A stretch of DNA of 64,000 nt from IMG/VR virus record IMGVR_UViG_3300023199_000204, positions 186,001-250,000 of that record. One strand, written 5' to 3'. The position numbers and the translations under genes were made by a program. Positions 34,559 to 60,445 of the stretch are shown here, one piece after another (positions within the stretch are counted from its first letter, which is position 1; the number at the start of each line of letters is the position of its first letter). The notes beneath the pieces are model-generated. The model was not told the origin of the DNA, did not search any database, and worked only from the letters and a program-made list of their open reading frames with translations.

Positions 34559-35476
34559 ATGGAAGATTTTAAAGTATCTGCGGGCTCTGTAATAGGAAAA
34601 TATCATTTAAAAACTAATAAAAATAATCAAGATAGCTACCAATACTATTCTGACAATGATAAAATTATAGCTGTTGTTTGTGATGGCTGTGGAAGTGCCC
34701 CCTATAGTGAAGTAGGTGCTAACTTGGGAGCTAAATTACTTCTAAATAGATTAAAAGAAAGAAACTTTTGGTCGTGTTCAGGAAACCAGTTAAAAGTTCT
34801 TAAACAAATTAGAAAAGTAAGAAATGATGTGATAAAAGATATATTATCATTTGTAGATATAATGATATATGATGAAGAGTTAGCATCTATCATTCAAGAT
34901 TATTTTTTATTTACCTCTGTATGTGCTGTTGTGTGTAAAAACTACTCTTATATATTTTCTATAGGGGATGGCTACTATGGTATTAATGGTGAGACAACAT
35001 CTCTTGGTCCATTTGAAAATAACGCCCCACCATATATCTCATACTATTTAATTAGAGATAAACTTATAGAAGACGATCCAAGTTTTTATTCATTTAAGCT
35101 TAATAAAATAATTAAAACTGAGGGAGTTGATTCAATTCTTCTTGGAACAGATGGTGTAGAAGATATTATATCTAATGAAGATAGAAATATTCCTGGAAAG
35201 AAAGATAAAATTGGTGGTATAGAACAATTTTATGACTTCAAATATGTCAAAAATAGTCAGGCAATAACAAGAAGACTTAATATAATTAATAAAAATTCCT
35301 ATAAGGTTGGGGGAGACCCCGCAATTCTCCTTTTAGAAAACGGTCCATTAGGAGATGATACAACCATTCTTGTTATTCATAGATATAACTCTGCTTTTAA
35401 AATAAAAAGGACAAGTGATGAAAGTTTATCTGAAGGGTCGGGGAATAAATCTGAAACCGACTCAATCAGTAGGTAA
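34559..35476 (+). CDS. PP2C-like Ser/Thr phosphatase (TerY-P type)
   Basis: GSVIGKYH...NQDS, VCDGCGSA...GA, IGDG, LGTDGV and GDDTT. Confidence 0.85.
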   Translation: MEDFKVSAGSVIGKYHLKTNKNNQDSYQYYSDNDKIIAVVCDGCGSAPYSEVGANLGAKLLLNRLKERNFWSCSGNQLKVLKQIRKVRNDVIKDILSFVDIMIYDEELASIIQDYFLFTSVCAVVCKNYSYIFSIGDGYYGINGETTSLGPFENNAPPYISYYLIRDKLIEDDPSFYSFKLNKIIKTEGVDSILLGTDGVEDIISNEDRNIPGKKDKIGGIEQFYDFKYVKNSQAITRRLNIINKNSYKVGGDPAILLLENGPLGDDTTILVIHRYNSAFKIKRTSDESLSEGSGNKSETDSISR

Positions 35477-36517: not shown

Positions 36518-37693
36518 ATGGAATTTGAAATAAACGACAGACTATTATTTCTGACGATTCACGGAAGTCACGCTTATGGAATGGCTAGACCTGAAAGTGA
36601 TATTGATATTAAAGGCTTAGGTGTTGCCCCTAGAAATTATTATTATTCTTTCTTTAAAAATTTTGAACAATATGAAGGAGAACTTTCTTTAAGGGATGAG
36701 TGTAAGCAACGACTTGAAGCGACAATTGGTCGTAGTATTAAATCAAATGAAAAGTTAGACTCGGTTATATACAATATTACTAAGTTTTTTAAATTAGCAT
36801 CTCAATGTAATCCAAACATTATTGAGGTATTGTTTGTTGATGATGAATCAATTCTATATTCTCATAAGATTATGGAAATGATTATAAATAATAGAGATTT
36901 ATTTCTATCTATGAAGGCGAACTTTAGGTTTCGTGGGTATGCTTTTTCTCAACTTAAAAGGATAAAACGTCATAGGCGTTGGTTATTAAATCCTATAGAA
37001 AGCAACCCAACTAGAGAAGATTATGGATTGCCACAAAGAACTGTTATGCCTGCGGACCAACTACAAGCAGCAGAATCTCTCATTCAAAAGAAAGTAGATG
37101 AATGGATTTTTGAACAGGAAGATATGACTCCAGAGCTTCTTAGTCTTGTAAGAAAAAGAACTATTAAATCTTTTAAAGAAGCTTTTACAGGTCTTGGTAT
37201 AAATAATATTACTGATGAATATGAAGATCTCAATAAGGCAAAACTTTCAAGAGGTGCGGGGAAGCTCCTAGGATATAGTGATAATTTTCTCGATCTTTTA
37301 GATAGCGAGCGAAGATATAAAGCACCAAAAACTGAATATAAACAATATAAAAGCTGGCAAAAGAATAGAAATCCTGTTAGAGCAGAGATGGAAGCTGAGT
37401 CAGGATTTGATCGAAAGCACGCTAGCCACCTTGTAAGGCTTATGAAAATGGCTAAAGAGATTTTATCAGAGGGAAAGGTAATAGTTAAAAGACCAGATGC
37501 TGAGGAGCTTCTTGGAATTAGAAATGGTTCAATGTCTTATGAAGAAGTTGTTAAGTGGGCAGAATTTCAAGACGGAGCAATTCAGGAAATATATGATAGT
37601 GGCTCTTCTCCTCTACCAAAAAAGCCAGATCTAAATAAGATAGATAAATTACACAAAGAAGTATTAGAAGCTGTATTTAAAGAATTTGACTAA
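36518..37693 (+). CDS. Predicted nucleotidyltransferase (RlaP/PF10127-like)
   Basis: IHGSHAYGMARPESDIDIKG, NPNIIE and KHASHLVRL. Confidence 0.8.
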   Translation: MEFEINDRLLFLTIHGSHAYGMARPESDIDIKGLGVAPRNYYYSFFKNFEQYEGELSLRDECKQRLEATIGRSIKSNEKLDSVIYNITKFFKLASQCNPNIIEVLFVDDESILYSHKIMEMIINNRDLFLSMKANFRFRGYAFSQLKRIKRHRRWLLNPIESNPTREDYGLPQRTVMPADQLQAAESLIQKKVDEWIFEQEDMTPELLSLVRKRTIKSFKEAFTGLGINNITDEYEDLNKAKLSRGAGKLLGYSDNFLDLLDSERRYKAPKTEYKQYKSWQKNRNPVRAEMEAESGFDRKHASHLVRLMKMAKEILSEGKVIVKRPDAEELLGIRNGSMSYEEVVKWAEFQDGAIQEIYDSGSSPLPKKPDLNKIDKLHKEVLEAVFKEFD

Positions 37694-38310: not shown

Positions 38311-39627
38311 ATGAAAAAGAATGACTTTAATTTTTCAGCCTATGTTGAAGAAAAAGAAGCATATTCTGAAAAACAAAAAAAATATCTTAGAAGAAAAAAA
38401 GCAGTAGGTGTTATCAAAAAAATAACATCTGTTGCCAGAGAGGCATTAGACATATATAGTTCTATTAAAAGAAAAGATTATATTTCTATAGGATTGGGAA
38501 CACTTTCTGCTACTGGCTCTATATTAGAGCACTTTTCTACGAATCAAGTTAGTGATGATGTTTATTTGGTTACCAAGGAAATGGGATTAGAAAAGGGTCC
38601 TCAAAATTCTAAAATGCTAATATATTCTTTCCTAAAGGATATGAATGTTCCATACAAAGTTATATGGAAAGAAATCACTAAAGATGATGGGGGCGAACCT
38701 TGTAGCATAGAAGAGTGGGATTTAGGAGATAGTTCTGTATATTTTCTAAAATTTACATCATATCTTGATGGGCCTTTCTTAAAGGATAGAAAGCAATTTA
38801 ATGTAGATATGGGAAAGGTTATTAGAGCTAATCTAGGAAGACATATTTGTATTGAGTCTGGAATTAATATAGCTGACTATGCGAATAAGGTTTCATTTTC
38901 AAAGATTTCACTGTCTTTTTTAGGTGATCCATATGTAAGTCATTTAGATCAAAAGCAATTAATAGACGATATTAAACTTTTTTTCGATAAGTCATACAAT
39001 AGGTCATTATTATTCTATGGTCCTCCTGGTTCTGGGAAGACCACATTAGCTTTAAGAATATCTAATACCTTAAATGAAAGTATTTTATCTATTAAAGGAG
39101 GGATCCTTATTTCCAGGAGTGCTGGTGAATTAATTGAAATAATAGATATGATAGATCCAACAATAATATTATTTGATGACATGGATAAAATTCCAAGGCT
39201 TGAGCAAATACTGGGAACTATTGAGGAATTTAATAATTATCGTGGCGATAGAAGCAGGTTATTTATTGCTACTATAAATGATTTAAGTAAAGTTCCTATG
39301 GCTATGAGAAGACCTGGTAGATTTGATCAGATAATTTCTTTTGGTTGCCCTGAAATAGAAACTAGATTAAAAATGGTTGAAGAGTATGCTAAATCTAAAA
39401 ATCTTATTCTTTCGGCAGAACAAATTTTAGAAACGGCTACATTGCTTGAAGGAATGACGGGAGCCTTTATTAAAGATATTATTACAAGGATCTCTGTATT
39501 AGGATATGAGAAGGTCGTACCTAATCATATTAATGAAATAAAAAATATTGTGTTTGAAGAAGAAGATTTATACGAAGAAGAGGAAGACCTTATTGTTACT
39601 GATAGTCCTAAATCTTCTTTATATTAA
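38311..39627 (+). CDS. AAA+ ATPase
   Basis: Walker A GPPGSGKT, Walker B ILFDDMD, SRH ATIN...RRPGRFD. Confidence 0.85.
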   Translation: MKKNDFNFSAYVEEKEAYSEKQKKYLRRKKAVGVIKKITSVAREALDIYSSIKRKDYISIGLGTLSATGSILEHFSTNQVSDDVYLVTKEMGLEKGPQNSKMLIYSFLKDMNVPYKVIWKEITKDDGGEPCSIEEWDLGDSSVYFLKFTSYLDGPFLKDRKQFNVDMGKVIRANLGRHICIESGINIADYANKVSFSKISLSFLGDPYVSHLDQKQLIDDIKLFFDKSYNRSLLFYGPPGSGKTTLALRISNTLNESILSIKGGILISRSAGELIEIIDMIDPTIILFDDMDKIPRLEQILGTIEEFNNYRGDRSRLFIATINDLSKVPMAMRRPGRFDQIISFGCPEIETRLKMVEEYAKSKNLILSAEQILETATLLEGMTGAFIKDIITRISVLGYEKVVPNHINEIKNIVFEEEDLYEEEEDLIVTDSPKSSLY

Positions 39628-39635
39628 TAAGAGAG

Positions 39636-41954
39636 GTGCTGATGGAAAAAATACAACTTCCGGTTCTTCCAATTAGAAGTCCCGATTTTCTTTTATTCCC
39701 TTGTTCTTTTGGGGATATTTATGTAGGAAGAGAATTTTCAATAGAAGCTCTAGCGTCTGCTAGAGCTAATAAAATTAATTTACTACTTGCTTTTCAAAAA
39801 GACCCTATAATTGACGAGCCAGAAATTGATGATTTACATAACATATGTGTTGAAGCAGAAATAAAAGACATTGTTAAAAACTCAACTGGTCCCGCCAGAG
39901 TTGTTTTAAGTGGTATAAAAAGAGCAGTACTTAAAGATTATTATCTTAGTGAAGGTAATTTTTATGTAGCCGATATAAAATATGTAAAGGAACCAAACTT
40001 TGAGCTAACTGATGATGATAAAGAAAAAATAAAAGTGCTTAGAGAAATTATAAGTACTTATTTTAAATCAGTAGTCATTAAAGTTAATGAAGTAAACTCT
40101 TCTGAAGATTTATCAAACTATGTAGATAATATATGTGGTCAATTATATAAGATATTTAGAACTAATAAAATACTTTTAAAACTTTTAAAAACTAAGCATC
40201 CTAGAAAAAGATTAGAAGGTTTGTTCGACATAATATCAAAAGAATCAAAATATAAAGAAGTTTCTTTTGATATGGAAAATGATTCTGAAATGGACGATGA
40301 CCATCCAGCAATAACAGATATTAAAAAGTTACATGACCAAGCGGCAGCAACCGAATTTCCTGAAGAAGTAGCAAAAGTTGTTGGGAGAGAACTTAAAAGA
40401 ATAAGAATGCTTCCACCAGGGAATGCTGAATTCCAAGTTACATATTCTTACTTAGATACTTTAATTGCTCTTCCTTGGAACAAATATACTGAAGATAAAC
40501 TAGATATAGAAGTTGCTAAAGATATATTAAATAGAGATCATTATGGAATGATAAAAGCCAAGGAAAGAATTTTAGAATTTTTGGCAGTTAAAAAATTAGT
40601 TTCTGAAAAGAAAGGTTCTATTCTCTGTTTCTGTGGTCCTCCCGGCGTAGGTAAAACTAGTATTGCCAGAAGTATAGCAGAAGCCGTTGGTAGAAAGTTT
40701 ATTAGGATGTCACTTGGTGGAATTAGTGACGAGGCAGAAATAAGAGGTCATAGAAAAACTTATATAGGGTCTATGGTTGGTAAGATAATGCAGCAGATTA
40801 AGAGAGTAGGAGTTAAGAACCCTGTATTTTTATTGGATGAGATTGATAAGATAAGCAAGAATTTTAAAGGAGACCCTGCGGCAGCATTATTAGAAGTATT
40901 AGATCCGGAACAGAATTCTACATTCGTAGATAATTATTTAGGCGTGCCTTTTGATTTATCACGAGTGATGTTCCTAGCAACTGCTAATGACATAAGTATG
41001 TTAGTCCCTGCTTTAAGAGATAGGTTGGAGATAATTGAAATATCTGGTTATTCAATTTTTGATAAAATAAAAATCGCTCAAAACTATTTACTTCCAAAAC
41101 AGCAAAAAGAAAATGGGCTTAAAGATTATGACATAACTGTTTCAGCAAAAGCGATAGAAAAAGTAATAGAAGAGTATACAAGAGAATCTGGGGTTCGTTC
41201 TTTAGAGAGAACTTGTGGAGCAATTATGAGAAAAATTGCTGTGATGGTTGCTTCAGGTAAAGATCCATATTCAATGATTAAAGCGGATATGATTCCTAAT
41301 CTACTAGGACCTCCAAAGGAATATTCAGAAAAGGCTGCCGAAAGACCAGAGATTGGGTTGTCAACTGGGCTAGCTTGGTCTGAAACAGGTGGTTCCATTT
41401 TATTTGTAGAGTGTTCTCTTAGTAATGGGAAAGGAAAAGTAATCTTAACAGGAAATTTAGGAAAAGTTATACAAGAATCAGCACAAGCTGCTTATACTTA
41501 TATAAAATCAAATTCAGAATCTCTTGGGATTGACACATCTTTAGTTGAAAACAGAGATGTTCATATTCACTTTCCAGCGGGAGCGATTCCAAAAGACGGT
41601 CCTAGTGCGGGAGTTGCTTTAGTTTCAGCAATGCTTTCTTGTTTCTTATTAAAGCCTGTTAGAAATGATATAGCAATGACTGGAGAGATAAGTTTAAGAG
41701 GAAGAGTTATGCCAATAGGTGGTTTAAGAGAGAAGGTTTTGGCAGCAGACCGAGCAGGAATAAGCACTGTATTATATCCCAAATTAAATAAATATGATTT
41801 GGAGGAAATTCCTGAAGATGTAAGGAAAAAGATGAAATTAATACAGATTTATCATATATCAGAAGCTATTGATTTGCTGTTAGTAGATGGGCAGGGGAAT
41901 GATAATAATGAATTGTCTTTACCAAGTACCCCAGTTGTTAATAGAAGTATCTAA
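39636..41954 (+). CDS. lon: ATP-dependent Lon protease
   Basis: Lon N-domain, GPPGVGKT, LLDEIDK, catalytic PKDGPSAG and IGGLREK. Confidence 0.95.
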   Translation: MLMEKIQLPVLPIRSPDFLLFPCSFGDIYVGREFSIEALASARANKINLLLAFQKDPIIDEPEIDDLHNICVEAEIKDIVKNSTGPARVVLSGIKRAVLKDYYLSEGNFYVADIKYVKEPNFELTDDDKEKIKVLREIISTYFKSVVIKVNEVNSSEDLSNYVDNICGQLYKIFRTNKILLKLLKTKHPRKRLEGLFDIISKESKYKEVSFDMENDSEMDDDHPAITDIKKLHDQAAATEFPEEVAKVVGRELKRIRMLPPGNAEFQVTYSYLDTLIALPWNKYTEDKLDIEVAKDILNRDHYGMIKAKERILEFLAVKKLVSEKKGSILCFCGPPGVGKTSIARSIAEAVGRKFIRMSLGGISDEAEIRGHRKTYIGSMVGKIMQQIKRVGVKNPVFLLDEIDKISKNFKGDPAAALLEVLDPEQNSTFVDNYLGVPFDLSRVMFLATANDISMLVPALRDRLEIIEISGYSIFDKIKIAQNYLLPKQQKENGLKDYDITVSAKAIEKVIEEYTRESGVRSLERTCGAIMRKIAVMVASGKDPYSMIKADMIPNLLGPPKEYSEKAAERPEIGLSTGLAWSETGGSILFVECSLSNGKGKVILTGNLGKVIQESAQAAYTYIKSNSESLGIDTSLVENRDVHIHFPAGAIPKDGPSAGVALVSAMLSCFLLKPVRNDIAMTGEISLRGRVMPIGGLREKVLAADRAGISTVLYPKLNKYDLEEIPEDVRKKMKLIQIYHISEAIDLLLVDGQGNDNNELSLPSTPVVNRSI

Positions 41955-41999: not shown

Positions 42000-42457
42000 T
42001 TCATCGAGGCGAGGTTTAACTAATATAATTAATATGAAAAAGAAAAAGAAAAAAGGGTAAATATATGAGGCACGTTAAAAAGTGTGACGAATGTAGTAGT
42101 GAAATGAAACCTCGTGGAGCATCAGATGCTTCTGGGAGTCTGTCTTTCAAATGTAAAAATACTCAGTGTGGAAGAACCTCTTGGGTTAGAAGAGTGCTGT
42201 TGAAACCACCAGTGCCTTTAACTGTAAGAAAAACTAAAGTTTTTAAATGGAAATAAGCATTGATGAATATTTAAAACCATTGTGTAATTTCTACTTAACA
42301 TTAGCAATAGTGCTATTATTAACAACTATAATAACATATTTTACATTACCTGTAGAAATTTCACAAATATCTTGTTTAGGATTATTGTGGTCAATGTTTG
42401 GTTATATATTTAATAAAAAATTATTAACCTCGCGTGGAAATAATAACGAGAAATAAA

Positions 42458-43822
42458 ATGGATGTAATTAAAGGAACAGTCTCTATTCCTAGTGGCTATT
42501 TTAACAGAATAGTTAAACAGGAATACTCAAGGTGGGGGAGGGCTTTAATTCGGGAGTTCCTTCAGAACTCAATTGACGCAGGGGCTTCGGAAGTAAAATT
42601 TAGATTTAAAGAAGATAATCTTACACTTACGATTACTGATGATGGTTGTGGAATGAATAAGGACACAATCATTAACAAGTTATTAGTATTGGGTGGAACA
42701 AAAAAGAGAATAGGCTCGGTTGGTGGGTTTGGAAAGGCAAAAGAAATATTGTTTTTCTCTTGGAGAAACTATTCAATAAAAACACAAAACTATTTAGTAG
42801 AAGGTTCAGAAGCCGATTTTTCTATAAGAGAAATAGATACATATCACTTTGGGACAAAGTGTATTATTCAATTTAATACTATGAGTGAATATAAATATGC
42901 TATGTCTTCTGCTACAAACTACCTTCCAGAAAATGAAGTAGAGGCTGACATATATTTAAATACTATCAAAGTTAAATGCTCACATTCTAACAAAGAAAAA
43001 TTAAAAGATTTAGGCTGGGGCATCTTATACAAGTCTAACAGAAGTAAGTTTGATATTCTGATTAGAAAAAATGGAATAAACATGTATAATTTACACTCCT
43101 CTTCAATTAAAGGATTAATTATTGAACTAACTGAAGAATCAATTGATGTGCTTAAAGCCAATAGAGATAGTTTAGTATTTGAAAAAGAACAGGAGTTAAT
43201 TAAAGTCATTAGGAATTTGGATACAAATAAAGCAATAGTGCTTTATAATTTAGAAGAAGATGTCCAAGAAGTGATAGAAGGAAAAAAAGGAGTATTTTAT
43301 AATCCACTTTGTAATAAAGTATCACTAGAAATAAATAATAGTATTGTAAAGCCACTTGTTAAATCAAAGTTTATCTTAGATGTAAATAATGATTTTATTA
43401 TTAGGAAAACTAAAAGTTTTTCATATGAAAAGATTAACGTATTTTTAACACAAAATAAAAAAGTTGCTGAAGCAGTGGCAAATGAGTGGGCTAAATTAAT
43501 ATCTAATATTATTGTTGCTAATAATATCAAGGTTCCATTTATAAGACCTGGGTTTTATTTCAGTGAAAATATAAATGGATTGTGTGAGGGTGAGATTACA
43601 TGCCCTTCAATTCTAATTAACCCCTTGAGCAATGATTTACAAGAAGAAATTAAAAAAGGAGGTGTGTTTTTATTAAAAGCATATATAGAAGATATTGCTT
43701 ATCACGAGTTATCTCACATAAGCAACAGATCTCATAATGAGAGTTTTGTATTCTCTTTGGAAGGGCTTAGGAGAAATCATAGGCAATGGAAGAAGAGAAA
43801 TTTTGTTAGTGTAGTTCTTTAA
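42458..43822 (+). CDS. GHKL (Hsp90/MORC-like) ATPase fused to a C-terminal HExxH zincin-like domain
   Basis: REFLQNSIDAGA, DDGCGM and GGFGKAK at the N-terminus. YHELSHISNRSHNESF at the C-terminus. Confidence 0.8.
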   Translation: MDVIKGTVSIPSGYFNRIVKQEYSRWGRALIREFLQNSIDAGASEVKFRFKEDNLTLTITDDGCGMNKDTIINKLLVLGGTKKRIGSVGGFGKAKEILFFSWRNYSIKTQNYLVEGSEADFSIREIDTYHFGTKCIIQFNTMSEYKYAMSSATNYLPENEVEADIYLNTIKVKCSHSNKEKLKDLGWGILYKSNRSKFDILIRKNGINMYNLHSSSIKGLIIELTEESIDVLKANRDSLVFEKEQELIKVIRNLDTNKAIVLYNLEEDVQEVIEGKKGVFYNPLCNKVSLEINNSIVKPLVKSKFILDVNNDFIIRKTKSFSYEKINVFLTQNKKVAEAVANEWAKLISNIIVANNIKVPFIRPGFYFSENINGLCEGEITCPSILINPLSNDLQEEIKKGGVFLLKAYIEDIAYHELSHISNRSHNESFVFSLEGLRRNHRQWKKRNFVSVVL

Positions 43823-43845
43823 TTAATAACGAAGGAGAAAAAGAC

Positions 43846-44037
43846 ATGTCTAATGAAGGAACACCGAAAATCTATCGCTATGGTAATGAGGAAATCGTGA
43901 ATAACGAAGGTCTCTCTCATGACCAAATTCGCCAGGCTTGGGCGACCGTTCACGCGGGTATCGCTAATGCCGAGCTAGTTTGTCTTGGAGACAATGTTTA
44001 CGAGTTTCGTACTGCTGGTGGCGATAAAGGTTGCTAA
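43846..44037 (+). CDS. Ubiquitin-like modifier (PRTRC protein C-like)
   Basis: 63 aa with pattern YRY...LSHDQIRQAWATVHAGIANA...YEF..AGGDKG-C, and gene context upstream of E2/JAB/E1. Confidence 0.7.
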   Translation: MSNEGTPKIYRYGNEEIVNNEGLSHDQIRQAWATVHAGIANAELVCLGDNVYEFRTAGGDKGC

Positions 44038-44045
44038 AGGAGCTT

Positions 44046-44088
44046 TGCCCCCGTCCATAAGTTATTTGGACGGGGGCATTGTTTTATT
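44046..44088 (+). terminator. Strong 12-bp GC hairpin immediately after the Ubl gene
   Basis: tgcccccgtcca-taagttatt-tggacgggggca followed by ttgttttatt. Confidence 0.7.
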
Positions 44089-44342
44089 ATGAATGACATA
44101 ATTATTAAAAGTTTATTTAACACTAACGGCAATTCAGAAAAGTCTATATTAAATAATATAAAATTATTAATGTCTTTAAAGGATCCACAAAGCTGTGATT
44201 TGTCAGTTGAAGATCTAGACGCAATTTTAGAATACTCTAACACTTCAAACACTTCAAACTTAAGCAAAAAGAAAGTTTTTATTTTTAAAAGATTGATTAA
44301 TAATCTTAGATTTGTAGAAGTAAAGGATGATAAATTTTTCAT

Positions 44343-45140
44343 ATGAACTTAAAAAAATTAAATAAAGATGAATTTATGTCCTTAGTTTATTGTCAAGCAG
44401 ATTTTCTTAAAATATATAAAGAATGCGACAAATTAGGAATTGATGTTGAAAATGTTATTATGCCAATTCAAAAAAGGAATTTATATTCTGCCAATGGTAA
44501 CAGAATAACTTTGTTTAATAAATTTATTAAAGCATTATTTCCTAGTTATAATTCTCCTGTAATTAATGGAGTGGAAAATATCAGCCTTAGTGCGAACAAG
44601 GAACTAAATAAATTATATTCTTATGCTTGGAATAATAGATATAGCTTTACCAGTCTAGGAGTTCCAAATTATTTAGTCTCAGCAAACAGTGAGTTTAATA
44701 ATCTTAAAAGACAGTTTAATAATCTTTATCTTTATAAAGTTAGCATTTCCACTCTAGGTCAGATAGACATAGACTTATCACAATTTAAAACCAATAATAA
44801 TTTAATAGATAATTCTATAAAATTATATAGAGACTATGGTCTTAATATTGATTATTATAATGCTAGTGATAGATACTGTTACTCAAATATAATACCAGTT
44901 ATTAAAAAATTAGCAGTTCTTTCTGAAAAAATTAAAGTAGCTTTAATAAAACTAGAAGAATTACATAAGTTTTATATATCGGAATTAAAAGAGAGGAAGA
45001 AAAAAGTTTTAGATGGTGTTATAAAAAATGCCGCACAGCAACCGAGAAGCTATAGTCCTGAACTTGATAATAGAATTAAAAACATAAAAGAGAGCGATGC
45101 TCAAAGAGCATTTGAAGAAGCACTAAGGAATACACCGTAA
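44343..45140 (+). CDS. Hypothetical protein inside the Ubl operon (with small ORF 44089..44346)
   Basis: Translationally coupled to both neighbours. No family recognised. Confidence 0.6.
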   Translation: MNLKKLNKDEFMSLVYCQADFLKIYKECDKLGIDVENVIMPIQKRNLYSANGNRITLFNKFIKALFPSYNSPVINGVENISLSANKELNKLYSYAWNNRYSFTSLGVPNYLVSANSEFNNLKRQFNNLYLYKVSISTLGQIDIDLSQFKTNNNLIDNSIKLYRDYGLNIDYYNASDRYCYSNIIPVIKKLAVLSEKIKVALIKLEELHKFYISELKERKKKVLDGVIKNAAQQPRSYSPELDNRIKNIKESDAQRAFEEALRNTP

Positions 45141-45871
45141 TGAAATTAAGTACTTTAAATAATTCAGAAGTTTTAATCAAATTAACAGCAGACTCTTCCT
45201 CTGTGGAGGTAGATTTTATAGATAAAAAAAGTGAAATAGTTACTTCGAAATCAATATCAATTGACGAATTAATTCATAGTTTAGCCTCTGGATATTCTTT
45301 CAACACTGGTCTTCTTCCCAAAGGTATAAGATCATTTTCAGGAACAAAAGACTATTATACAGTAATAGTAGAAATGCCTGCCCGCAAAAGAAAAGTTTTG
45401 GTTATGGATTATAATTCTGAATTCTCAGAAGAAGAGGACAAGTTGCTTCCATTTCCTGATATGGTTTTTCTAATCAGAGTAAATAATTCTATTGTCGAGA
45501 TGGAAAGCTGTAGGCTCTTTGCCCTTAAAAGACCTATAGCTACATATAATGATCGTTTATATAGGTTTCCTTTAGGAAATGTATATGGAAAAGAAGAATA
45601 TAACTATAAAATATGTTGGAACTCGGTTAGAATGGATCCAGTTAATGAAATAGTTGAGATTAATCAAGTAATTGACAAGTTTTTTAACAGCACTTTTAAT
45701 GGTGACTTGATAAACGATGGAGGGATTTGTTTTAACTCAATGGTAGCACAAGATTTTAGTGAATTTCATTATCATTTAGCAGAATTAGATACGTTTCCAA
45801 TAAATACTTTAGTAGAGACAGATTTAACAATAAGAGATTTAATAGAAAAAGATTTGAATGGAGATTATTAA
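45140..45871 (+). CDS. Prokaryotic E2-like protein (family D / PRTRC protein B-like)
   Basis: LPFPDMVFL...LFAL...LYRFPLGNVY...ICW, with a candidate catalytic Cys in ICW. Confidence 0.7.
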   Translation: MKLSTLNNSEVLIKLTADSSSVEVDFIDKKSEIVTSKSISIDELIHSLASGYSFNTGLLPKGIRSFSGTKDYYTVIVEMPARKRKVLVMDYNSEFSEEEDKLLPFPDMVFLIRVNNSIVEMESCRLFALKRPIATYNDRLYRFPLGNVYGKEEYNYKICWNSVRMDPVNEIVEINQVIDKFFNSTFNGDLINDGGICFNSMVAQDFSEFHYHLAELDTFPINTLVETDLTIRDLIEKDLNGDY

Positions 45872-45873
45872 AA

Positions 45874-46980
45874 ATGGGAAAAAGAAAAAAGAATAAAAGG
45901 ACACGAAGTCATTCTTCAAATGATGTTACTCAAGGTAACAAAAGAGCTATTATAGTAAAAAATGGCAAAAGCTGCTACGGGCAAAATACTAATCATAGTA
46001 AGAAGCTTTCTGAAGAGGATAAAAAGAAAATGGTTTCTCTACAAAAAATGATGGTTGGTCATTATGTAGAAAATATACCCGAAGATGCTCCAAAAAAAAT
46101 TAATTATGTTCTACAGGGCAATGGTGTTTATGAGAAAAGAGAAAACGATATTGGAGTTTTTATAAGAAAGGTGTCCGCGACACAAGTTCCTGGACTATAC
46201 TCTCCTATTACAGAGGGCTGGAGTCTTAAAGTTCCATTAATACCAGCAGAACTTCTTTGTAAAGCAATTTCTTTTTTCAGAAAAATTTGTAAAACTATGA
46301 ATGAGAGTGAAGTGTTTCTTCAGTTCTTTTTTGATAAGACGAAAGAGGAGTATTTCATACATTGTCCTAAACAAAAAGTTGGAAAAGGTTCTGTAGAGTA
46401 TGAAAATGATGATGTGTATAGAGACTCAAATAATATTTTAGTATTTGAAATCCATAGCCATAATACTATGGACGCGTTCTTTTCAACTACCGATGACGGT
46501 GATGAAAAAGAGGATAGGTTTTATGGGGTTGTTGGAAAACTTAATGAGCATATGCCAACAATTAAATTACGCGGAGTCTTTGCTGGCAAAGAGACTGAAA
46601 TAAAAGTAGAAGATATTTTCGATCTAAGTGGAGACCAATATCATAGTCTAGAATTCCCTAAAGAATGGGAAAATAATGTTACTGTTGCGAATTATTCCGA
46701 GTCTTATAGAGGTTTCTTTTCGTCAGAAAGTAGGAATAGATGGTTTGATAAGGATGATGATGAAACTAAAAAGGAAAGTAAAGAATCTAATTTTGATTTG
46801 GTTGTTTATAATGGGGGACAAGGAAGTGTTCCAGGAAACACTGATAAACCTAAACCTAAATCTAAACTAGATGAAGAAATTCAAGCCATTATGAGTAAAT
46901 ATTATCGTGAGCCATCACAAGATAATGACGACGATAATGATGTAAATGAACTATATAGAAGAGGATATTTCTGGGAGTAA
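45874..46980 (+). CDS. JAB/MPN metallopeptidase (PRTRC protein A-like) with acidic tail
   Basis: E (NESEV) plus EIHSH-x7-S-x2-D (EIHSHNTMDAFFSTTDD). Confidence 0.85.
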   Translation: MGKRKKNKRTRSHSSNDVTQGNKRAIIVKNGKSCYGQNTNHSKKLSEEDKKKMVSLQKMMVGHYVENIPEDAPKKINYVLQGNGVYEKRENDIGVFIRKVSATQVPGLYSPITEGWSLKVPLIPAELLCKAISFFRKICKTMNESEVFLQFFFDKTKEEYFIHCPKQKVGKGSVEYENDDVYRDSNNILVFEIHSHNTMDAFFSTTDDGDEKEDRFYGVVGKLNEHMPTIKLRGVFAGKETEIKVEDIFDLSGDQYHSLEFPKEWENNVTVANYSESYRGFFSSESRNRWFDKDDDETKKESKESNFDLVVYNGGQGSVPGNTDKPKPKSKLDEEIQAIMSKYYREPSQDNDDDNDVNELYRRGYFWE

Positions 46981-46981
46981 A

Positions 46982-47830
46982 ATGAATTCATTACCAAAAG
47001 TATATTATCTTAGTGGTTATAGAGCAATAACTGATATATTTTTAGTTGGTTGTGGTGGAACTGGAAGTTATGTAGCACCTCAGTTGGCAAGATTAAATTA
47101 TTTGATGGGACTGGTAGGAGTTTCCAGGAAAAGAATAATTTTTATTGATGGTGATTCAGTTGAAGAAAAGAATATATCAAGACAGAATTTTATTAAATCT
47201 GATGTAGGAAAAAATAAGGCTCAGGTTTTAGCTAAAAGATATTCATTTGCTTTTCAAAATGAAATACATTCATATTTAAAATATTTAGAATCAGAGGAAG
47301 ATTTTCTAAGAATAATTAAATCTTCTGGAAGGCCAAGCTATCCATTAATAATTGGTTGTGTAGATAATAATAAGACTCGTCACGTGATTAATAGATTTAT
47401 TCAATCTTATAATAAGTCTGTTTTTTGGGTAGACTCTGGAAATGAAGAAACTAATGGACAAGTTATTTGTAGCTTTAAACCTATTTATAATGATTCTAGA
47501 GGAATTAATCCTAGAGAGGCTGCGCCTGGATCAAAAGGAGTATTTACAACCCCTACAGTTGTTGAAGTATTTGATAATATGACAGACACTGGTAAATTTA
47601 ATTCTGAATTAAGTTGCGCAGAAGCCTCTATTAGCAATCCCCAAAATATTATGACCAATGTATCTGCTGCTAATTTGGTAGTAAATTATATAAATAAAAT
47701 CTATAAAAGGGATGATATATCTTCTCACGGAGTTATATTTACCATAAATAATACATTTCAAACAATAATTAATACTGTAGAAACTCTAGCTAAAGTTAAT
47801 CCTGAAAGACTTTGTTCCTGGGAGACCTAA
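46982..47830 (+). CDS. E1/ThiF-family Ubl-activating enzyme
   Basis: VGCGGTGS, DGDSVEEKNISRQNF, GCVDN, DSGN and LSCAE (candidate catalytic Cys). Confidence 0.9.
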   Translation: MNSLPKVYYLSGYRAITDIFLVGCGGTGSYVAPQLARLNYLMGLVGVSRKRIIFIDGDSVEEKNISRQNFIKSDVGKNKAQVLAKRYSFAFQNEIHSYLKYLESEEDFLRIIKSSGRPSYPLIIGCVDNNKTRHVINRFIQSYNKSVFWVDSGNEETNGQVICSFKPIYNDSRGINPREAAPGSKGVFTTPTVVEVFDNMTDTGKFNSELSCAEASISNPQNIMTNVSAANLVVNYINKIYKRDDISSHGVIFTINNTFQTIINTVETLAKVNPERLCSWET

Positions 47831-48547
47831 AAAATGAATAATGAAATTAAATCAAATGATTTGCCCTTTGCGACTGATACAGAATGTGAAAGAATTCGTT
47901 ATAATCTCATTAGTAAGGGAATGATAATTGAAAATTTAAATCATACTGTAACTAAAAAAAATGGGAATGAAGCAGTTTCAACTAATGAAAATTGTAAATC
48001 ACTTAGGAATTACCTAATTAAAAAAGGGATTTTATCTAATAATTTATGCGAAGTTAATACTAGAAAAAATCTTCCAACTTCCTTAGAAGAAGGAAAATAT
48101 GAAACTAGACCTATTCAGTCTGATGCGGACTATTATAGTAGAAGACAAGCTTATTGGAGAGTTCTTCAGGAAGTTTTAATTTCTAGAATTAATTTGAATC
48201 TCATTTTAGGAAGTATAAAGCAATCAGATCCTGATTGGATATTTTAATGAATGTTATATGGGGTAATAGTGGAGGGATGGGTTTATTCGACTATTACTCT
48301 TTACAACATATTGTTTGGTTTATAGCAATAACTTTATTATGTTACTTATTTTTTTAACAGAGGATAGTGTTTTTAACTCTTATAGTAATAACTATTACTT
48401 GGGAAGTTATAGAATTCTATTTAGCAAGTCATTTTCCATCGTTTCCATTTGTTGGTAAAGAGGAGTTTATTAATAAGGTTATTGGAGATCCAATATCTAA
48501 CATTGCAGGTTATTATTTAGCGAAGACATCTATAAATAGGATAAGAA

Positions 48548-48850
48548 ATGAACAAAAACAAAACTCCTGCTTGGAAAAGACAGGGAAATAAAAGAGAATT
48601 TACTATTGGTCACTTGGAAGTTTATGTTAGGAATAATGATATTGATAAAGCAATAAGGGATCTTAAAAACAAAATGAACAAAGAGGGCATTTTGGCTGAG
48701 CTTAAAAAGCGTAGACACTATGAGAAACCTTCAGATGTTAAGAGAAAAAAGAAAAGAGAAGCAATTAAAAAAGCAAAGATAAAACTTGGAAATTTAAACA
48801 CAAGAAGAAAAAAGAAAAGTTCAAAAAAGAAGAGAGGCAATGCCAGTTAA
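48548..48850 (+). CDS. rpsU: Ribosomal protein bS21
   Basis: VYVRNNDIDKAIRDLKNKMNKEGILAELKKRRHYEKPS...KKREA. Confidence 0.88.
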   Translation: MNKNKTPAWKRQGNKREFTIGHLEVYVRNNDIDKAIRDLKNKMNKEGILAELKKRRHYEKPSDVKRKKKREAIKKAKIKLGNLNTRRKKKSSKKKRGNAS

Positions 48851-48892: not shown

Positions 48893-49333
48893 ATGAATAA
48901 TAAGGAAATATCATATGCTTATATGGCTGGTTTTGTTGATGCTAATGGCTCAATATCAATTGTCTCATTAGCAAAAACAAAGCAATATATAATTAAGATA
49001 TCAGTTTGTAATAGAGACAAAACAGTAATTGATCTTTTTAAAAAAGAGTTTTCCGGAGAAAAAGTTAGGAAAAGAATTCCAAAGAATGTAAATTGGAGAC
49101 CAATTTATGTTTGGTCACGCACCTCTTTAAAAGCTAAAGAGATAATTGAAAAATTATTGCCTTATTTAAGAATAAAAAAGAAACAAGCAAAATTAACTAT
49201 TAAGGCCCAGAAGATAAAATCTTCTGGATTACCAAATGATACGAGATGGAAGTTAGAGAAATTTGCAAAAAGGCAAGAAAAATTAAGAGTTTTAAAAGAA
49301 GAATGTAATCTTTTAAATAAAAGAGGAACATAA
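48893..49333 (+). mobile_element. Free-standing single-motif LAGLIDADG homing endonuclease
   Basis: AYMAGFVDANGSI, ISVCNRD, EKLLPYLRIKKKQA. Confidence 0.85.
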
Positions 49334-49719
49334 TGGGAATAACTATTACTAATAGTGCTCAAAATCAACTGAAATTATTAGTAAAAAATACAAATGAGTC
49401 TATTTTTTACTTTGGGGTAATTAGTGGAGGCTGTGTAGCATTTACATATATTTTTAGATTTATATCTTTAAAAGAAAAAGAAAAATATACTAAAACTCCT
49501 AAAAACTTTAAAGTTTTTAATTATGATGACTTTAAAATAGTTGTCGATAAAAAAAGTTATTTATATGTAAATGGAACGGAAATAGATTGGGTCGATAAAC
49601 TGATGGGCAAACATTTTGAGTTTCATAACCCCAATGTAAATTCAAGTTGTGGGTGCGGAGAATCAATAAGTTTTGAAATAAAAGAAGAAGGATTAGGAGA
49701 ACCTGATGAAGGAAAATGA
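49333..49719 (+). CDS. iscA: A-type Fe-S carrier (IscA/HesB family)
   Basis: ITITNSA, SGGCVAFTY, VDKKSYLYVNGTEIDW and NPN...SCGCGES. Confidence 0.88.
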   Translation: MGITITNSAQNQLKLLVKNTNESIFYFGVISGGCVAFTYIFRFISLKEKEKYTKTPKNFKVFNYDDFKIVVDKKSYLYVNGTEIDWVDKLMGKHFEFHNPNVNSSCGCGESISFEIKEEGLGEPDEGK

Positions 49720-53678: not shown

Positions 53679-54395
53679 ATGAAAAAATTGCTATTAACTT
53701 TTTTATTACTATTGCTATCTGCTTGTAGTGGGTGCTCTCATAATAAATTTGGGTCGGCAGAAATAGATAATAATTATTCAAAAGGATATTATTCTACTGT
53801 TTATTTTTCCAAAAAAGATGGGAAAATATTTGGTAGTGGAGCTATTATTTTAAATAGAAAAAACGAAAAAATGGTAATAATAACTGTGGGACATATTTCC
53901 AACGTCTTTTTATCTAGAGGTTGGAAGATGTATGTATCTACATCTTATGATCACAATGTTTATGAGGCAGAAACTCTAAAAGTAGATTATGGTAAAGATT
54001 TGGCGTTAGTTGTCACAAAAAAAATAATGAAAAGATCTGGACCTTATGTTAAATTAGCCAATGAACCGCCGAAGATAGGACAAAAAGCTTATATAGTTGG
54101 CGCTCCAAGCGGAACTAAAGGAATAGTAACTACTGGTATAGTTAGTGGTTATTTATTTTGTAATAGTCCATTAAAAAATTCGTGTCTTAAAAATAAACAC
54201 GATATAAATTTATATTATAGATTTAGTGGACCAGCGTTTTTTGGAAACTCTGGTGGTGGAATGTTTAATGAAAATAATGATTTACTAGGAGTTATAAGTT
54301 TTATAAAAAGCAAGAAGCTTTCTATATTTTCAACTATTCTTGAACCTGGTTCAGCTCACGCAGTGTCTTATCAACTAATTAAACAATTTATGTAA
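53679..54395 (+). CDS. Trypsin-like serine protease, lipoprotein
   Basis: Lipobox LSAC and catalytic triad TVGHI / DLALV / GNSGGG. Confidence 0.85.
   Translation: MKKLLLTFLLLLLSACSGCSHNKFGSAEIDNNYSKGYYSTVYFSKKDGKIFGSGAIILNRKNEKMVIITVGHISNVFLSRGWKMYVSTSYDHNVYEAETLKVDYGKDLALVVTKKIMKRSGPYVKLANEPPKIGQKAYIVGAPSGTKGIVTTGIVSGYLFCNSPLKNSCLKNKHDINLYYRFSGPAFFGNSGGGMFNENNDLLGVISFIKSKKLSIFSTILEPGSAHAVSYQLIKQFM

Positions 54396-57921: not shown

Positions 57922-60445
<2,524 letters not shown>

What the first reader, a model, noticed from the sequence alone, without database searches (positions are those of the whole stretch)
42458..47830. Phage-encoded ubiquitin-like conjugation operon (Ubl, E2, JAB, E1) coupled to a GHKL-zincin and downstream of Lon
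Seen: contiguous, mostly coupled genes for a 63-aa Ubl-like protein, two unknown proteins, an E2-like protein with Cys (ICW), a JAB peptidase with an intact HxH-S-D motif and an E1/ThiF with a candidate Cys (LSCAE). A GHKL ATPase-HExxH fusion lies immediately upstream, and AAA+ and Lon genes lie just before that. Known: this gene set matches the PRTRC / prokaryotic E2-family-D systems of plasmids and integrative elements, whose function is unresolved. Other bacterial Ubl systems (Bil, CBASS Cap2/Cap3) conjugate proteins in anti-phage defence. No sulfur-transfer partners (ThiG, MoaE) are nearby. Inference: a virus-run protein-tagging pathway that could mark host defence proteins for the phage Lon/AAA or zincin, shield virion proteins from host Ubl systems, or attack co-infecting elements. 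This is the best candidate for an undescribed system in the window.
Basis: partly seen in the sequence, partly recalled or inferred. Interest (0 to 1): 0.88.

Follow-up and report, generated by a model that had tools for sequence, protein, structure and literature searches.

The report
Jumbo-phage ubiquitin-like tagging operon
A giant bacteriophage carries a complete, apparently working set of genes for attaching a small ubiquitin-like protein to other proteins. The same set is kept in dozens of other large phages, including cultured Bacillus phages that encode the tag as a polyubiquitin-style string of repeats, and its targets are unknown.

Summary
Window 43846-47830 encodes Ubl, an 85-aa protein, a 265-aa protein, E2 (Prok-E2_D), a JAB/JAMM peptidase and a ThiF-type E1. 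They are tightly coupled, and every catalytic residue is invariant across 40-53 relatives. Upstream lie a GHKL ATPase fused to a WLM/YgjP-like zincin, then Lon and an AAA+ ATPase.

The window comes from a 316-kb IMG/VR phage contig. It is not a stray plasmid fragment: about 45 phage-like contigs carry the cassette, many of 200-460 kb. So do three cultured Bacillus jumbo phages and a B. thuringiensis 235-kb plasmid record matching the published pBtic235 jumbo prophage.

The closest known kind is the uncharacterised PRTRC / "6d" operon. This is a separate large-phage lineage. Its scores fall below NCBIfam cut-offs, it lacks ParB and PRTRC D/E/F, and it has its own accessory proteins.

New points:
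- The Ubl ends in a conserved [AG]G[TS]KG. About half the homologues stop exactly at that Gly. The rest carry a one-residue cap (Cys here) or a short tail.
- Many relatives encode 2-7 head-to-tail repeats, like polyubiquitin.
- Lon synteny holds only within the window's own clade.
- The GHKL-zincin is a recurrent but optional neighbour.

Most likely this is a phage-run, reversible protein-conjugation pathway. Targets are unknown. It is a new variant of a known, unsolved kind.

The parts
38311..39627 (+). AAA+ ATPase (context; precedes Lon)
   Evidence: PF00004 2.4e-16, with weak similarity to proteasome-activating nucleotidase/CDC48/IetA-type ATPases. An AAA gene also precedes Lon in L021 and L022.
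39636..41954 (+). Full-length LonA protease (context; conserved synteny within the window's phage clade only)
   Evidence: TIGR00763 770.8 bits, above the 608 cut-off; Lon_C 1.6e-77. Lon lies 2-6 kb upstream of the Ubl in about 10 distinct related contigs. It is absent near the cassette in Bacillus-type and other branches.
42065..42256 (+). 63-aa Cys-rich (zinc-ribbon-like) protein that always follows Lon
   Evidence: CxxC...CxxC pattern. Homologues sit directly after Lon in 13 loci. No Pfam family.
42247..42456 (+). 69-aa predicted membrane protein
   Evidence: Hydrophobic sequence. Homologues in 9 loci at the same place.
42434..43822 (+). GHKL ATPase fused to a WLM/YgjP-like HExxHxxxxxH metallopeptidase. 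An optional but recurrent neighbour of the cassette.
   Evidence: HATPase_c_3 1.5e-7. The N-box, G1 and G2 boxes and H424-E425-H428-H434 are invariant in 14 homologues. YgjP-like hits in 8/14 and WLM in 6/14 members. It sits directly before the Ubl in L030, L067, L071 and L072, and in the same slot in L070, where the contig ends first. It is absent from other cassette loci. Distant homologues lie elsewhere in phage contigs.
43846..44037 (+). Ubiquitin-like modifier (Prok_Ub / PRTRC_C-like), ending ...GGDKG plus a one-residue Cys cap
   Evidence: phmmer 3e-17 to the five-repeat poly-Ubl of Bacillus phage WH1, and BLASTP 9e-8 per repeat. That protein hits Pfam Prok_Ub at 3.4e-27 and TIGR03738 at 1e-20. 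The [AG]G[TS]KG tail is conserved in about 40 homologues. The AlphaFold model has order beta-beta-alpha-alpha-beta-beta at pLDDT 81. Foldseek was inconclusive.
44089..44346 (+). 85-aa accessory protein with a conserved extreme C-terminal Phe/Tyr-Ile
   Evidence: A small ORF occupies the same position in 35 loci. In 27 of them it ends in [FYL][IVF], mostly -FI, Bacillus phages included. No Pfam, NCBIfam or PHROG hit. hhalign against PRTRC_E was negative.
44343..45140 (+). 265-aa mostly helical accessory protein, in the position held by PRTRC_F; candidate specificity or scaffold factor
   Evidence: A family of only 90 representatives among 1.84 billion proteins, all 60-310 aa apart from two repetitive outliers. 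No NCBIfam family in 10 distant members. Conserved N-terminal QYRQIDFLRLF-like block and C-terminal AQxxF[ND]xAL helix. AlphaFold pLDDT 71.5, helical. No PDB fold match. hhalign against PRTRC_F was negative. Weak hhalign link to the 466-559-aa Bacillus-type protein: E 1.2e-4, probability 55%.
45140..45871 (+). E2-like conjugating enzyme (Prok-E2_D), catalytic Cys159
   Evidence: PF14460 35.8 bits, above the 25 cut-off. TIGR03737 36.7 bits, below the 131 cut-off. C159 and N147 are 100% conserved and P144 95% in 44 sequences. This gives a PxxN...C site that mimics the HPN...C site of classical E2s without the His.
45874..46980 (+). JAB/JAMM metallopeptidase with an N-terminal alpha+beta domain and an acidic C-terminal tail
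   Evidence: TIGR03735 1.1e-15, 57.7 bits, below the 101.8 cut-off. Prok-JAB 21.8 bits. E146, H194, H196, S204 and D207 are conserved in 53 sequences.
46946..47830 (+). Minimal single-domain E1 (ThiF fold), candidate catalytic Cys224. Likely true start is 46982.
   Evidence: PF00899 8.4e-23. TIGR03736 122.6 bits, below the 144.75 cut-off. GxGGxG, R79-Q80, K91, D140 and C224 are 100% conserved in 40 sequences. Best solved relatives are the active adenylation domain of Uba1, UBA5 and MccB. No rhodanese domain.
47834..48247 (+). 137-aa conserved protein that follows E1 in the window's clade
   Evidence: Homologues lie directly after E1 in 13 loci. There are 22 invariant residues in 5 sequences. 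No significant family.

Best explanation
This is a working, phage-encoded ubiquitin-like protein-conjugation pathway of the PRTRC/6d type, in a lineage specific to large phages.

Inferred steps, taken from the conserved residues and the established chemistry of E1/E2/JAMM enzymes:
1. The JAB peptidase exposes the C-terminal Gly of the 6-kDa Ubl. In this phage it removes the one-residue Cys cap. In relatives it would cut poly-Ubl precursors into monomers.
2. The minimal ThiF-type E1 adenylates that Gly and takes it onto Cys224 as a thioester.
3. The Ubl passes to Cys159 of the E2.
4. The E2 transfers it to lysines of target proteins. There is no E3. The 85-aa '-FI' protein and the 265-aa helical protein probably help choose or hold targets.
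5. The JAB can also reverse the mark.

The pathway acts in the infected cell for the phage's benefit. My best guess at the output, held weakly, is that tagging controls the stability or assembly of proteins. In the window's clade this may work together with the adjacent Lon and, where present, the GHKL-WLM protease. What is shown here is gene content, residue conservation, the Ubl tail and poly-Ubl architecture, and phage distribution. Every chemical step and every target is inferred.
For: - Family assignments for E1, E2 and JAB.
- The Ubl is tied to Prok_Ub/PRTRC_C through the WH1 poly-Ubl.
- Residue conservation: E2 C159/N147, E1 C224/R79/D140 and the JAMM E-HxH-S-D motif across 40-53 sequences.
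- The Ubl tail [AG]G[TS]KG is conserved. 21 of 41 ORFs end exactly at the Gly. The others have one-residue caps or short tails, or are 2-7 head-to-tail repeats. This arrangement makes sense only if a peptidase releases a free C-terminal Gly for activation.
- Tight translational coupling of the genes.
- Retention of the six-gene core Ubl-small-mid-E2-JAB-E1 at 25-50% identity in about 45 contigs and three cultured jumbo phages. This implies purifying selection.
- The large-phage E1s form one well-supported group apart from canonical PRTRC.
- Composition matches the surrounding genome.
Against: - There is no biochemical evidence for any member of the 6d/PRTRC kind, and no solved structures of its E2 or JAB.
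- The window's own Ubl does not reach any Pfam or NCBIfam threshold. The fold search was statistically inconclusive.
- No E3 and no identified target.
- The window's proteins sit on a long branch.
- The window lacks several genes that all ten compared Lon-clade relatives keep between Lon and the Ubl.
- The Lon link could be mere collinearity of related genomes. S21 and other downstream genes are collinear too.
Confidence: 0.65

Rival explanations
1. Virion-directed conjugation. The Ubl is attached to the phage's own structural proteins, as a decoration, a cross-link or an assembly step, rather than to host proteins.
For: The poly-Ubl of Bacillus phage vB_BceM_WH1 (gp211) is annotated 'virion structural protein' by its depositors. 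Ubl and JAB domains are already known in lambda-like tail-assembly proteins (Iyer 2006).
Against: The basis of that annotation could not be traced. No paper was found. The near-identical gene in phage Edson is 'hypothetical'. The cassette lies among accessory genes (RNA repair, chaperone, protease), not structural genes.
Confidence: 0.2
2. Conflict or maintenance module. Like other mobile Ubl/E1/E2/JAB operons, it serves inter-element warfare: counter-defence against host systems, exclusion of co-infecting phages, or an addiction-like function. It does not serve phage morphogenesis or proteostasis.
For: Iyer et al. proposed this for the mobile 6a-6e operons. Related bacterial systems (Bil, Bub, CBASS Cap2/3) act in phage-host conflict. 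The gene slot before the Ubl is variable and holds cargo such as the GHKL-WLM protein.
Against: No PADLOC defence model matches except partial E1 similarity to CBASS E1-E2. The core is stably inherited within phage lineages rather than sporadic.
Confidence: 0.25
3. Sulfur-carrier system. The Ubl is thiocarboxylated by the E1 and donates sulfur, for example for tRNA thiolation, in keeping with the tRNA-repair genes in the window.
For: The ThiF fold is shared with ThiF, MoeB and TtuC. The window carries Thg1-like, CCA-adding, RNA ligase and IscA-like genes.
Against: No rhodanese domain, and no ThiG/MoaE/TtuA-type partner in the ORFs scanned. The IscA-like gene is specific to the window and not found beside the cassette in relatives. 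An E2 with an invariant Cys, a JAB and poly-Ubl precursors are not needed for sulfur transfer.
Confidence: 0.06
4. Peptide-modification (RiPP-like) pathway. The E1 acts like MccB or PaaA on the C-terminus of a repeated precursor peptide.
For: MccB and PaaA are among the solved relatives of the E1. Repeated precursors recall multi-core RiPP precursors.
Against: The repeats are 57-aa folded Prok_Ub domains. An E2 and a JAMM peptidase are present. No exporter or immunity genes were seen.
Confidence: 0.03

Closest known systems
PRTRC system (TIGR03734-03742), i.e. operon type 6d of Iyer, Burroughs & Aravind 2006; Pfam Prok_Ub, Prok-E2_D, Prok-JAB
   Same: Best NCBIfam hits of E1, JAB and E2 are PRTRC_ThiF, PRTRC_A and PRTRC_B. 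The Ubl has the PRTRC_C-type ...G.KG tail. The gene order Ubl-(x)-mid protein-E2-JAB-E1 parallels C-F-B-A-ThiF in Ralstonia phage Dina. The E2 is stand-alone and lacks the HPN histidine, the JAB has an extra N-terminal domain, and a helical protein is present, all as described for 6d. Function is unknown in both.
   Different: All three enzyme scores fall below the curated cut-offs. No ParB, PRTRC_D, E or F was detectable. There is no invariant His after the E2 Cys. Extra parts are the conserved '-FI' small protein and, in the window's clade, the 137-aa protein. The JAB is much longer (290-660 aa against about 200-260). Poly-Ubl precursors occur. The E1s form a separate, supported large-phage clade.
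Bil (BilABCD) anti-phage ubiquitination system
   Same: It has Ubl + E2 + JAB + E1 and no E3. The chemistry is cysteine thioester.
   Different: The Bil E1 is a multidomain IAD-AAD-CYS protein and the Bil Ubl is ISG15-like. Here the E1 is a 294-aa single adenylation domain and the Ubl a single 57-aa domain. Bil is host-encoded defence. This system is phage-encoded.
Bub (6E/DUF6527) operons
   Same: A bacterial Ubl/E1/E2 pathway whose Ubls can carry several beta-grasp domains.
   Different: Bub works through Ser/Tyr oxyesters and lacks catalytic cysteines, and it has a DUF6527 serine protease. Here both cysteines are invariant, and the peptidase is a JAMM enzyme.
CBASS type II Cap2/Cap3
   Same: E1 and JAB homology. 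PADLOC E1-E2 models hit the E1 weakly.
   Different: Cap2 is an E2-E1 fusion that conjugates the CD-NTase itself, with no free Ubl. No cyclase or effector is present here.
Eukaryotic polyubiquitin genes (own knowledge)
   Same: In relatives there are head-to-tail repeats, each ending in the conjugation motif, with a short C-terminal cap. In the window there is a single Ubl with a one-residue cap.
   Different: No sequence relationship beyond the beta-grasp superfamily. The tail is KG, not RGG. Processing would be by a JAMM enzyme rather than by USP/UCH enzymes.
Archaeal SAMP/UbaA/JAMM and Pup-proteasome tagging (own knowledge, and titles)
   Same: A small tag activated at its C-terminus in a prokaryote, linked in those systems to an AAA+ protease. 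Here Lon and an AAA+ ATPase lie nearby.
   Different: SAMPylation needs no E2, and Pup is not a beta-grasp protein. A functional Lon link is unproven here.

Membership tests
PRTRC system (NCBIfam TIGR03734-03742) | ThiF-family E1 scoring above the TIGR03736 cut-off | tested here: not met
   Best hit, but 122.6 bits against the 144.75 cut-off.
PRTRC system (NCBIfam TIGR03734-03742) | PRTRC_A (JAB) and PRTRC_B (E2) above their cut-offs | tested here: not met
   57.7 against 101.8 bits, and 36.7 against 131.45 bits. These are the only or best NCBIfam hits, but sub-threshold.
PRTRC system (NCBIfam TIGR03734-03742) | PRTRC_C ubiquitin-like protein | tested here: inconclusive
   The window's Ubl gives no hit even at E<=1. 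The L005 homologue scores 0.0076. The five-repeat WH1 homologue scores 73.6 bits against the 45.95 cut-off. The link to the window is by phmmer/BLASTP and the shared G.KG tail.
PRTRC system (NCBIfam TIGR03734-03742) | ParB-related protein and PRTRC proteins D, E, F in the cassette | tested here: not met
   No such hit in any ORF scanned from 34.5 to 53 kb or in relatives. hhalign of the 265-aa and 85-aa families against Dina PRTRC_F and PRTRC_E gave probability 0.1% or less. Those templates were single sequences, so power was low.
Operon type 6d (Iyer et al. 2006) | Separate Ubl, E2 lacking the HPN His, JAB with an extra N-terminal domain, E1 without rhodanese, plus a helical protein | tested here: met
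   Gene content and domain hits. The JAB N-terminal region is conserved.
Operon type 6d (Iyer et al. 2006) | Absolutely conserved His C-terminal to the E2 catalytic Cys | tested here: not met
   No His reaches 90% conservation in 44 E2 sequences. The conserved positions after C159 are N187, L190 and L224.
Pfam Prok-E2_D (PF14460) | Score above the gathering threshold, with the catalytic Cys | tested here: met
   35.8 bits against 25. C159 is invariant.
JAMM/MPN+ metallopeptidases | E...HxH...S...D zinc site | tested here: met
   E146, H194, H196, S204 and D207 are present and conserved. Pfam Prok-JAB itself is sub-threshold for the window (21.8 against 25) but above threshold in relatives.
E1/ThiF/MoeB adenylating enzymes | GxGxxG nucleotide loop, Arg finger, Mg-binding Asp, and a Cys after the adenylation core | tested here: met
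   G35/G37/G38/G40, R79, D140 and C224 are all 100% conserved in 40 sequences. PF00899 81 bits.
Ubiquitin-like beta-grasp modifiers | Beta-grasp fold with a flexible tail ending in Gly | tested here: inconclusive
   The AlphaFold order is bb-a-a-bb with a disordered tail, pLDDT 81. Foldseek gave no hit with E<=0.001. A Ubl domain (1v5t) and protein G B1 were among the weak hits. The tail Gly is conserved.
Bil (BilABCD) | Multidomain IAD-AAD-CYS E1 and ISG15-like Ubl | tested here: not met
   The E1 is 294 aa with one ThiF domain. The Ubl is 63 aa with one domain.
Bub (6E/DUF6527) | No catalytic cysteines; a DUF6527 serine protease | tested here: not met
   The cysteines are invariant. There is no DUF6527 hit.
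Ubl thioester cascade (function) | Formation of E1~Ubl and E2~Ubl thioesters and isopeptide conjugates | not testable with these tools
   Requires biochemistry.

The most novel reading that the evidence does not exclude
Large phages run their own ubiquitin-like 'tag and process' system. It has a polyubiquitin-style precursor. Its conjugates are read by phage-encoded proteases: Lon with its Zn-ribbon partner, and the GHKL-WLM ATPase-protease. This would amount to a viral ubiquitin-protease system operating inside bacteria, used to remove host defence proteins or to time phage protein turnover.
Probability: 0.15. Interest if true: 0.92.

Novelty: new variant of a known kind. Interest (0 to 1): 0.7.

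Why it matters
Bacterial ubiquitin-like pathways (CBASS Cap2/3, Bil, Bub) have so far been worked out as host defences. The PRTRC/6d kind has been known since 2006 and has never been given a function.

Here the same enzyme logic is stably inherited by a broad lineage of large phages. That puts ubiquitin-like tagging on the virus side of the conflict.

Two things make the old question directly testable:
- The conserved KG tail and the polyubiquitin-like precursors give clear biochemical predictions: JAB cleavage, Cys-dependent thioesters and a Gly remnant on target lysines.
- The system is present in cultured Bacillus jumbo phages and in a B. thuringiensis 235-kb plasmid record matching the inducible pBtic235 jumbo prophage. 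No published mention of the cassette in those phages was found in the searchable literature.

Tried and rejected
- Nucleotide search of the cassette against 50,697 phage records found nothing.
- PHROGs gave nothing for the Ubl, the two unknown proteins, E2 or JAB.
- PADLOC gave only partial E1 similarity to CBASS E1-E2 models.
- The Foldseek PDB search with the Ubl model was statistically inconclusive. With the 265-aa protein model it found nothing meaningful; the best TM-scores were about 0.15-0.2.
- PDB sequence searches with E2 and JAB profiles found nothing.
- hhalign of the 265-aa and 85-aa families against PRTRC_F and PRTRC_E of phage Dina was negative.
- An exhaustive profile search with the 265-aa family found only 90 representatives of similar size, and no bridge to a named family.
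- Larger variants of JAB, E1 and E2 in relatives showed no extra Pfam domains that could hint at targets.
- The promoter/terminator scan was uninformative. Promoter-like sites were fewer than in shuffles, and there is only a weak terminator-like hairpin right after Lon.
- The genome scan gave only distant (34-39%) hits in Clostridia/Eubacteriales/Thermosipho MAGs, so the window's host stays unknown.
- Literature searches found no paper describing this cassette in phages. Terms searched: PRTRC; jumbo phage + ubiquitin; Prok-E2 + bacteriophage; phage-encoded + ubiquitin-like; WH1; KLEB27-3; pBtic235. The library excludes many subscription papers, so this is not proof of absence.
- Rejected: a recent plasmid/ICE insertion. 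Composition matches the flanks, and the cassette is syntenic in relatives.
- Rejected: Lon as an obligatory partner. It is absent from the Bacillus-type and other branches.

Full report
WHAT IS THERE. The window is part of IMGVR_UViG_3300023199_000204, a 316-kb viral contig. All ORFs of 120 aa or more are on the + strand and G+C is about 30% throughout. Scanned ORFs include RNA ligases, a Thg1-like tRNA-His guanylyltransferase, a CCA-type nucleotidyltransferase, GroEL, ribosomal protein S21, HNH and LAGLIDADG endonucleases and phosphoesterases. This is the usual accessory load of a very large phage. No capsid or terminase gene was identified inside the 64 kb, so the phage call rests on IMG/VR, on this gene content and on the relatives described below.

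Gene order between 38.3 and 48.2 kb:
- AAA+ ATPase
- LonA
- a 63-aa Cys-rich protein
- a 69-aa membrane protein
- GHKL ATPase fused to a zincin
- 63-aa Ubl
- 85-aa protein
- 265-aa protein
- E2
- JAB
- E1
- 137-aa protein

From the 85-aa gene onward, neighbouring genes overlap or are at most 3 bases apart. The E1 probably starts at Met13 (46982), which aligns with the starts of its homologues and lies 2 bases after the JAB stop.

FAMILY ASSIGNMENTS.
- E1: Pfam ThiF 8.4e-23. The best NCBIfam hit is PRTRC_ThiF at 122.6 bits.
- JAB: PRTRC_A 1.1e-15.
- E2: Pfam Prok-E2_D 35.8 bits (cut-off 25) and PRTRC_B 2.7e-9.

All three NCBIfam scores are below the curated cut-offs, so these are relatives of the PRTRC families rather than members.

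The window's Ubl hits no model directly. It matches the repeats of Bacillus phage vB_BceM_WH1 gp211 (phmmer 3e-17, BLASTP 9e-8 per repeat). That protein scores 94.5 bits on Pfam Prok_Ub and 73.6 bits on PRTRC_C. An AlphaFold model built on 23 homologues gives strand-strand-helix-helix-strand-strand and a floppy tail at pLDDT 81. This is compatible with a minimal beta-grasp. The Foldseek search gave no significant hit, so the fold rests on family homology, not on the structure search.

CATALYTIC RESIDUES.
- E2, 44 sequences: C159 and N147 are invariant and P144 is 95% conserved. This forms a PxxN...C site like the HPN...C site of classical E2s, without the His.
- JAB, 53 sequences: the E-HxH-S-D zinc site is kept.
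- The E1 has no rhodanese domain. Its nearest solved relatives are the active adenylation domain of Uba1, UBA5 and MccB.

RELATIVES AND DISTRIBUTION. Searches of IMG/VR, JGI metagenomes, Logan/ENA assemblies and GenBank phages and plasmids returned about 45 loci with the cassette. Many lie on contigs of 183-460 kb.

Cultured carriers:
- Bacillus jumbo phage vB_BceM_WH1 (230 kb)
- Bacillus jumbo phage Edson (234 kb)
- Bacillus jumbo phage vB_BauM_KLEB27-3 (217 kb)
- the 235-kb B. thuringiensis israelensis plasmid pAM65-52-3-235K and its sister records. One of these, NZ_CP051859, is the accession a published paper gives for the inducible jumbo prophage pBtic235.

The paper on pBtic235 that could be read does not mention ThiF or ubiquitin.

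The conserved core everywhere is Ubl, then a small protein, then a mid-size protein, then E2, JAB and E1. An IQ-TREE phylogeny of 40 E1s places 32 large-phage sequences in one group (support 96/99). Canonical PRTRC-like sequences, including that of temperate Ralstonia phage Dina, form another (96/95). The window is the earliest and longest branch of its sub-clade. Dina shows the canonical order E-C-F-B-A-ThiF as annotated by NCBI. PRTRC genes in a phage genome are therefore already on record, though the literature found does not discuss them.

THE UBL TAIL AND POLY-UBL. Across 41 Ubl ORFs the C-terminus is [AG]G[TS]KG.
- 21 end exactly at that Gly.
- Eight, plus the window, carry a single extra residue (Cys, Val, Gln or Asn).
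- Others have 5-17-residue tails. The PRTRC-like L011 and L017 carry extensions of 62-80 residues.
- WH1 gp211 is five head-to-tail copies, each ending QAGTKG, plus a 15-residue cap.
- The pBtic235-type protein is four copies plus a 17-residue cap.
- Metagenomic relatives have 2-7 copies.

This is the gene architecture of eukaryotic polyubiquitin. It predicts that the co-encoded JAB releases monomers with a free Gly for the E1. In the window the JAB would only need to remove one Cys.

THE TWO 'UNKNOWN' PROTEINS. The small protein is found at the same position in 35 loci. In 27 of them it ends in [FYL][IVF], usually Phe-Ile, from the window ('...FFI') to the Bacillus phages ('...DFI', '...DYI'). 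A conserved extreme C-terminal hydrophobic dipeptide suggests a docking or recognition motif. What it docks into is unknown.

The 265-aa protein belongs to a rare family. Only 90 representatives were found among 1.84 billion proteins, all 60-310 aa apart from two repetitive outliers. It has a conserved N-terminal block, a charged coiled-coil of variable length and a C-terminal AQxxF[ND]xAL helix. Its model is helical at pLDDT 71.5, with no PDB fold match. It has no NCBIfam or Pfam family. It shows no detectable similarity to PRTRC_F. There is a weak profile match to the N-terminal part of the 466-559-aa protein at the same place in the Bacillus type (E 1.2e-4, probability 55%). It fits Iyer's 'rapidly diverging alpha-helical protein' of 6d operons. 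I regard both proteins as candidate specificity or scaffold factors. That is inference.

THE NEIGHBOURS. Lon, the 63-aa Cys-rich protein and usually the 69-aa membrane protein lie 2-6 kb upstream of the Ubl in about 10 distinct contigs of the window's clade. Some loci are duplicates of the same phage. The same contigs are also collinear downstream: the 137-aa protein, a 74-aa ORF, S21 and a 351-aa protein. The Lon linkage may therefore simply reflect shared ancestry. Bacillus-type and other branches carry the cassette without Lon.

Between the membrane protein and the Ubl, the ten compared Lon-clade relatives carry a set of genes that the window lacks entirely. These include DUF7227 and a well-conserved roughly 111-aa basic protein ending PGRxRGGK. 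The window instead has the GHKL-zincin.

That GHKL-zincin is well conserved. The ATPase boxes and HExxHxxxxxH are invariant in 14 homologues. Its C-terminal domain hits the YgjP-like and WLM metallopeptidase families in 8 and 6 of 14 members. Homologues at 33-44% identity sit immediately before the Ubl in L030, L067, L071 and L072, and in the same slot in L070, whose contig ends before any Ubl. Homologues at 29-31% identity lie in unrelated phage neighbourhoods. It is thus a recurrent, optional neighbour and not a core part. WLM-type proteases are linked to SUMO/ubiquitin pathways in eukaryotes (own knowledge). This makes a functional tie plausible but unproven.

MECHANISM.
- Most likely (0.65): the cassette is a functional, reversible Ubl-to-protein conjugation pathway used by the phage during infection, with the steps given under 'best explanation'.
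- The target class is open. I give roughly equal, low weight to control of protein stability (with Lon/WLM in this clade), modification of virion proteins (supported only by the untraceable WH1 annotation) and conflict functions.
- Sulfur transfer and RiPP-like chemistry are unlikely. The invariant E2 cysteine, the JAB, the poly-Ubl precursors and the absence of partner enzymes argue against them. The IscA-like gene 1.5 kb downstream is specific to the window.

COMPARISON AND NOVELTY. The system works like, and descends from the same stock as, PRTRC/6d. Iyer et al. already listed B. cereus/thuringiensis among 6d carriers. It fails the curated PRTRC membership tests and lacks ParB and proteins D/E/F. 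It differs from Bil (multidomain E1), Bub (oxyester chemistry, serine protease) and CBASS Cap2 (E2-E1 fusion, no free Ubl). What appears new, within the limits of the searchable literature:
- a distinct large-phage lineage of this kind exists
- it has polyubiquitin-like precursors and a capped KG tail
- the '-FI' small protein is conserved across it
- it is present in cultured jumbo phages that make it testable

I rate it a new variant of a known but functionally unsolved kind.

Noticed in passing
L014:3823-4722 (Bacillus phage vB_BceM_WH1 gp211); L015:3882-4631 (B. thuringiensis plasmid pAM65-52-3-235K, pBtic235-like); L016:8995-9702; L053, L055: Polyubiquitin-like genes: 4-7 head-to-tail 57-aa Ubl repeats, each ending AGTKG, plus a short C-terminal cap. 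WH1's copy is annotated 'virion structural protein'. The basis for that label could not be traced.
   Followed up: partly
L002:1740-2078, L004:7459-7797, L005:7910-8254, L006:6632-7009 and six more loci; absent from the window: A well-conserved basic protein of about 111 aa, ending in an invariant PGRxRGGK, lies upstream of the Ubl (directly, or with one or a few ORFs between) in all ten compared Lon-clade relatives. The window lacks it and the neighbouring DUF7227 genes. The ubiquitin-like RGG tail may or may not be meaningful.
   Followed up: partly
window 44089-44346 and the equivalent ORF in 27 of 35 loci: The small protein after the Ubl ends in a conserved extreme C-terminal Phe/Tyr-Ile. 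This could be a docking or degron-like motif.
   Followed up: partly
L004:2170-5580 (and L020): The Lon ORF is 1136 aa. Its match to the window's Lon is split at residue 341, next to the start of the AAA domain (from residue 330), leaving about 360 extra residues. This could be an intein or another insertion.
   Followed up: no
window 48548-48850, 48893-49333, 49333-49719: Phage-encoded ribosomal protein S21, which is conserved downstream of the cassette in 11 relatives. It is followed by a LAGLIDADG endonuclease and an IscA/HesB-type Fe-S carrier gene, neither of which has a counterpart in the relatives' flanks.
   Followed up: partly
window 18497-19651, 26465-27412, 30622-31272, 33295-33906, 36518-37693, 331-414: A cluster of RNA-repair and tRNA genes: RNA ligases, a Thg1-like tRNA-His guanylyltransferase, a NinI-like phosphatase/RNA ligase, a CCA-type nucleotidyltransferase and a tRNA-Leu(TAA). 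A nucleotidyltransferase and an RNA ligase also flank the cassette in Bacillus phage KLEB27-3.
   Followed up: no
window 34559-35476, 53679-54395, 57937-59538: A PP2C-type protein phosphatase, a protease-like protein (PHROG 9683) and a full-length GroEL chaperonin. With Lon and the AAA+ ATPase, the region is rich in protein-quality-control genes.
   Followed up: no
L043:2058-4121, L044:7980-10043, L045:6865-8928: A 427-aa JAB homologue sits directly next to a 247-aa nucleotidyltransferase, with no E1 or E2 detected nearby. This is a different arrangement of the same JAB type.
   Followed up: no
L036:5385-5884; L038:11821-12735; L004:8706-8885: Variants of the cassette: two tandem Ubl genes (one ending G, one G-Cys); a second E2 paralogue downstream of E1; and a third Ubl copy that has lost the KG tail (ends ...SSIED).
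   Followed up: no
L068:7001-8482, L069:7001-8446: More distant GHKL-WLM/YgjP-like fusion proteins (29-31% identity) occur in other large phage-like contigs without any Ubl cassette. The fusion is a widespread, unannotated family in its own right, with 96 clusters found.
   Followed up: partly
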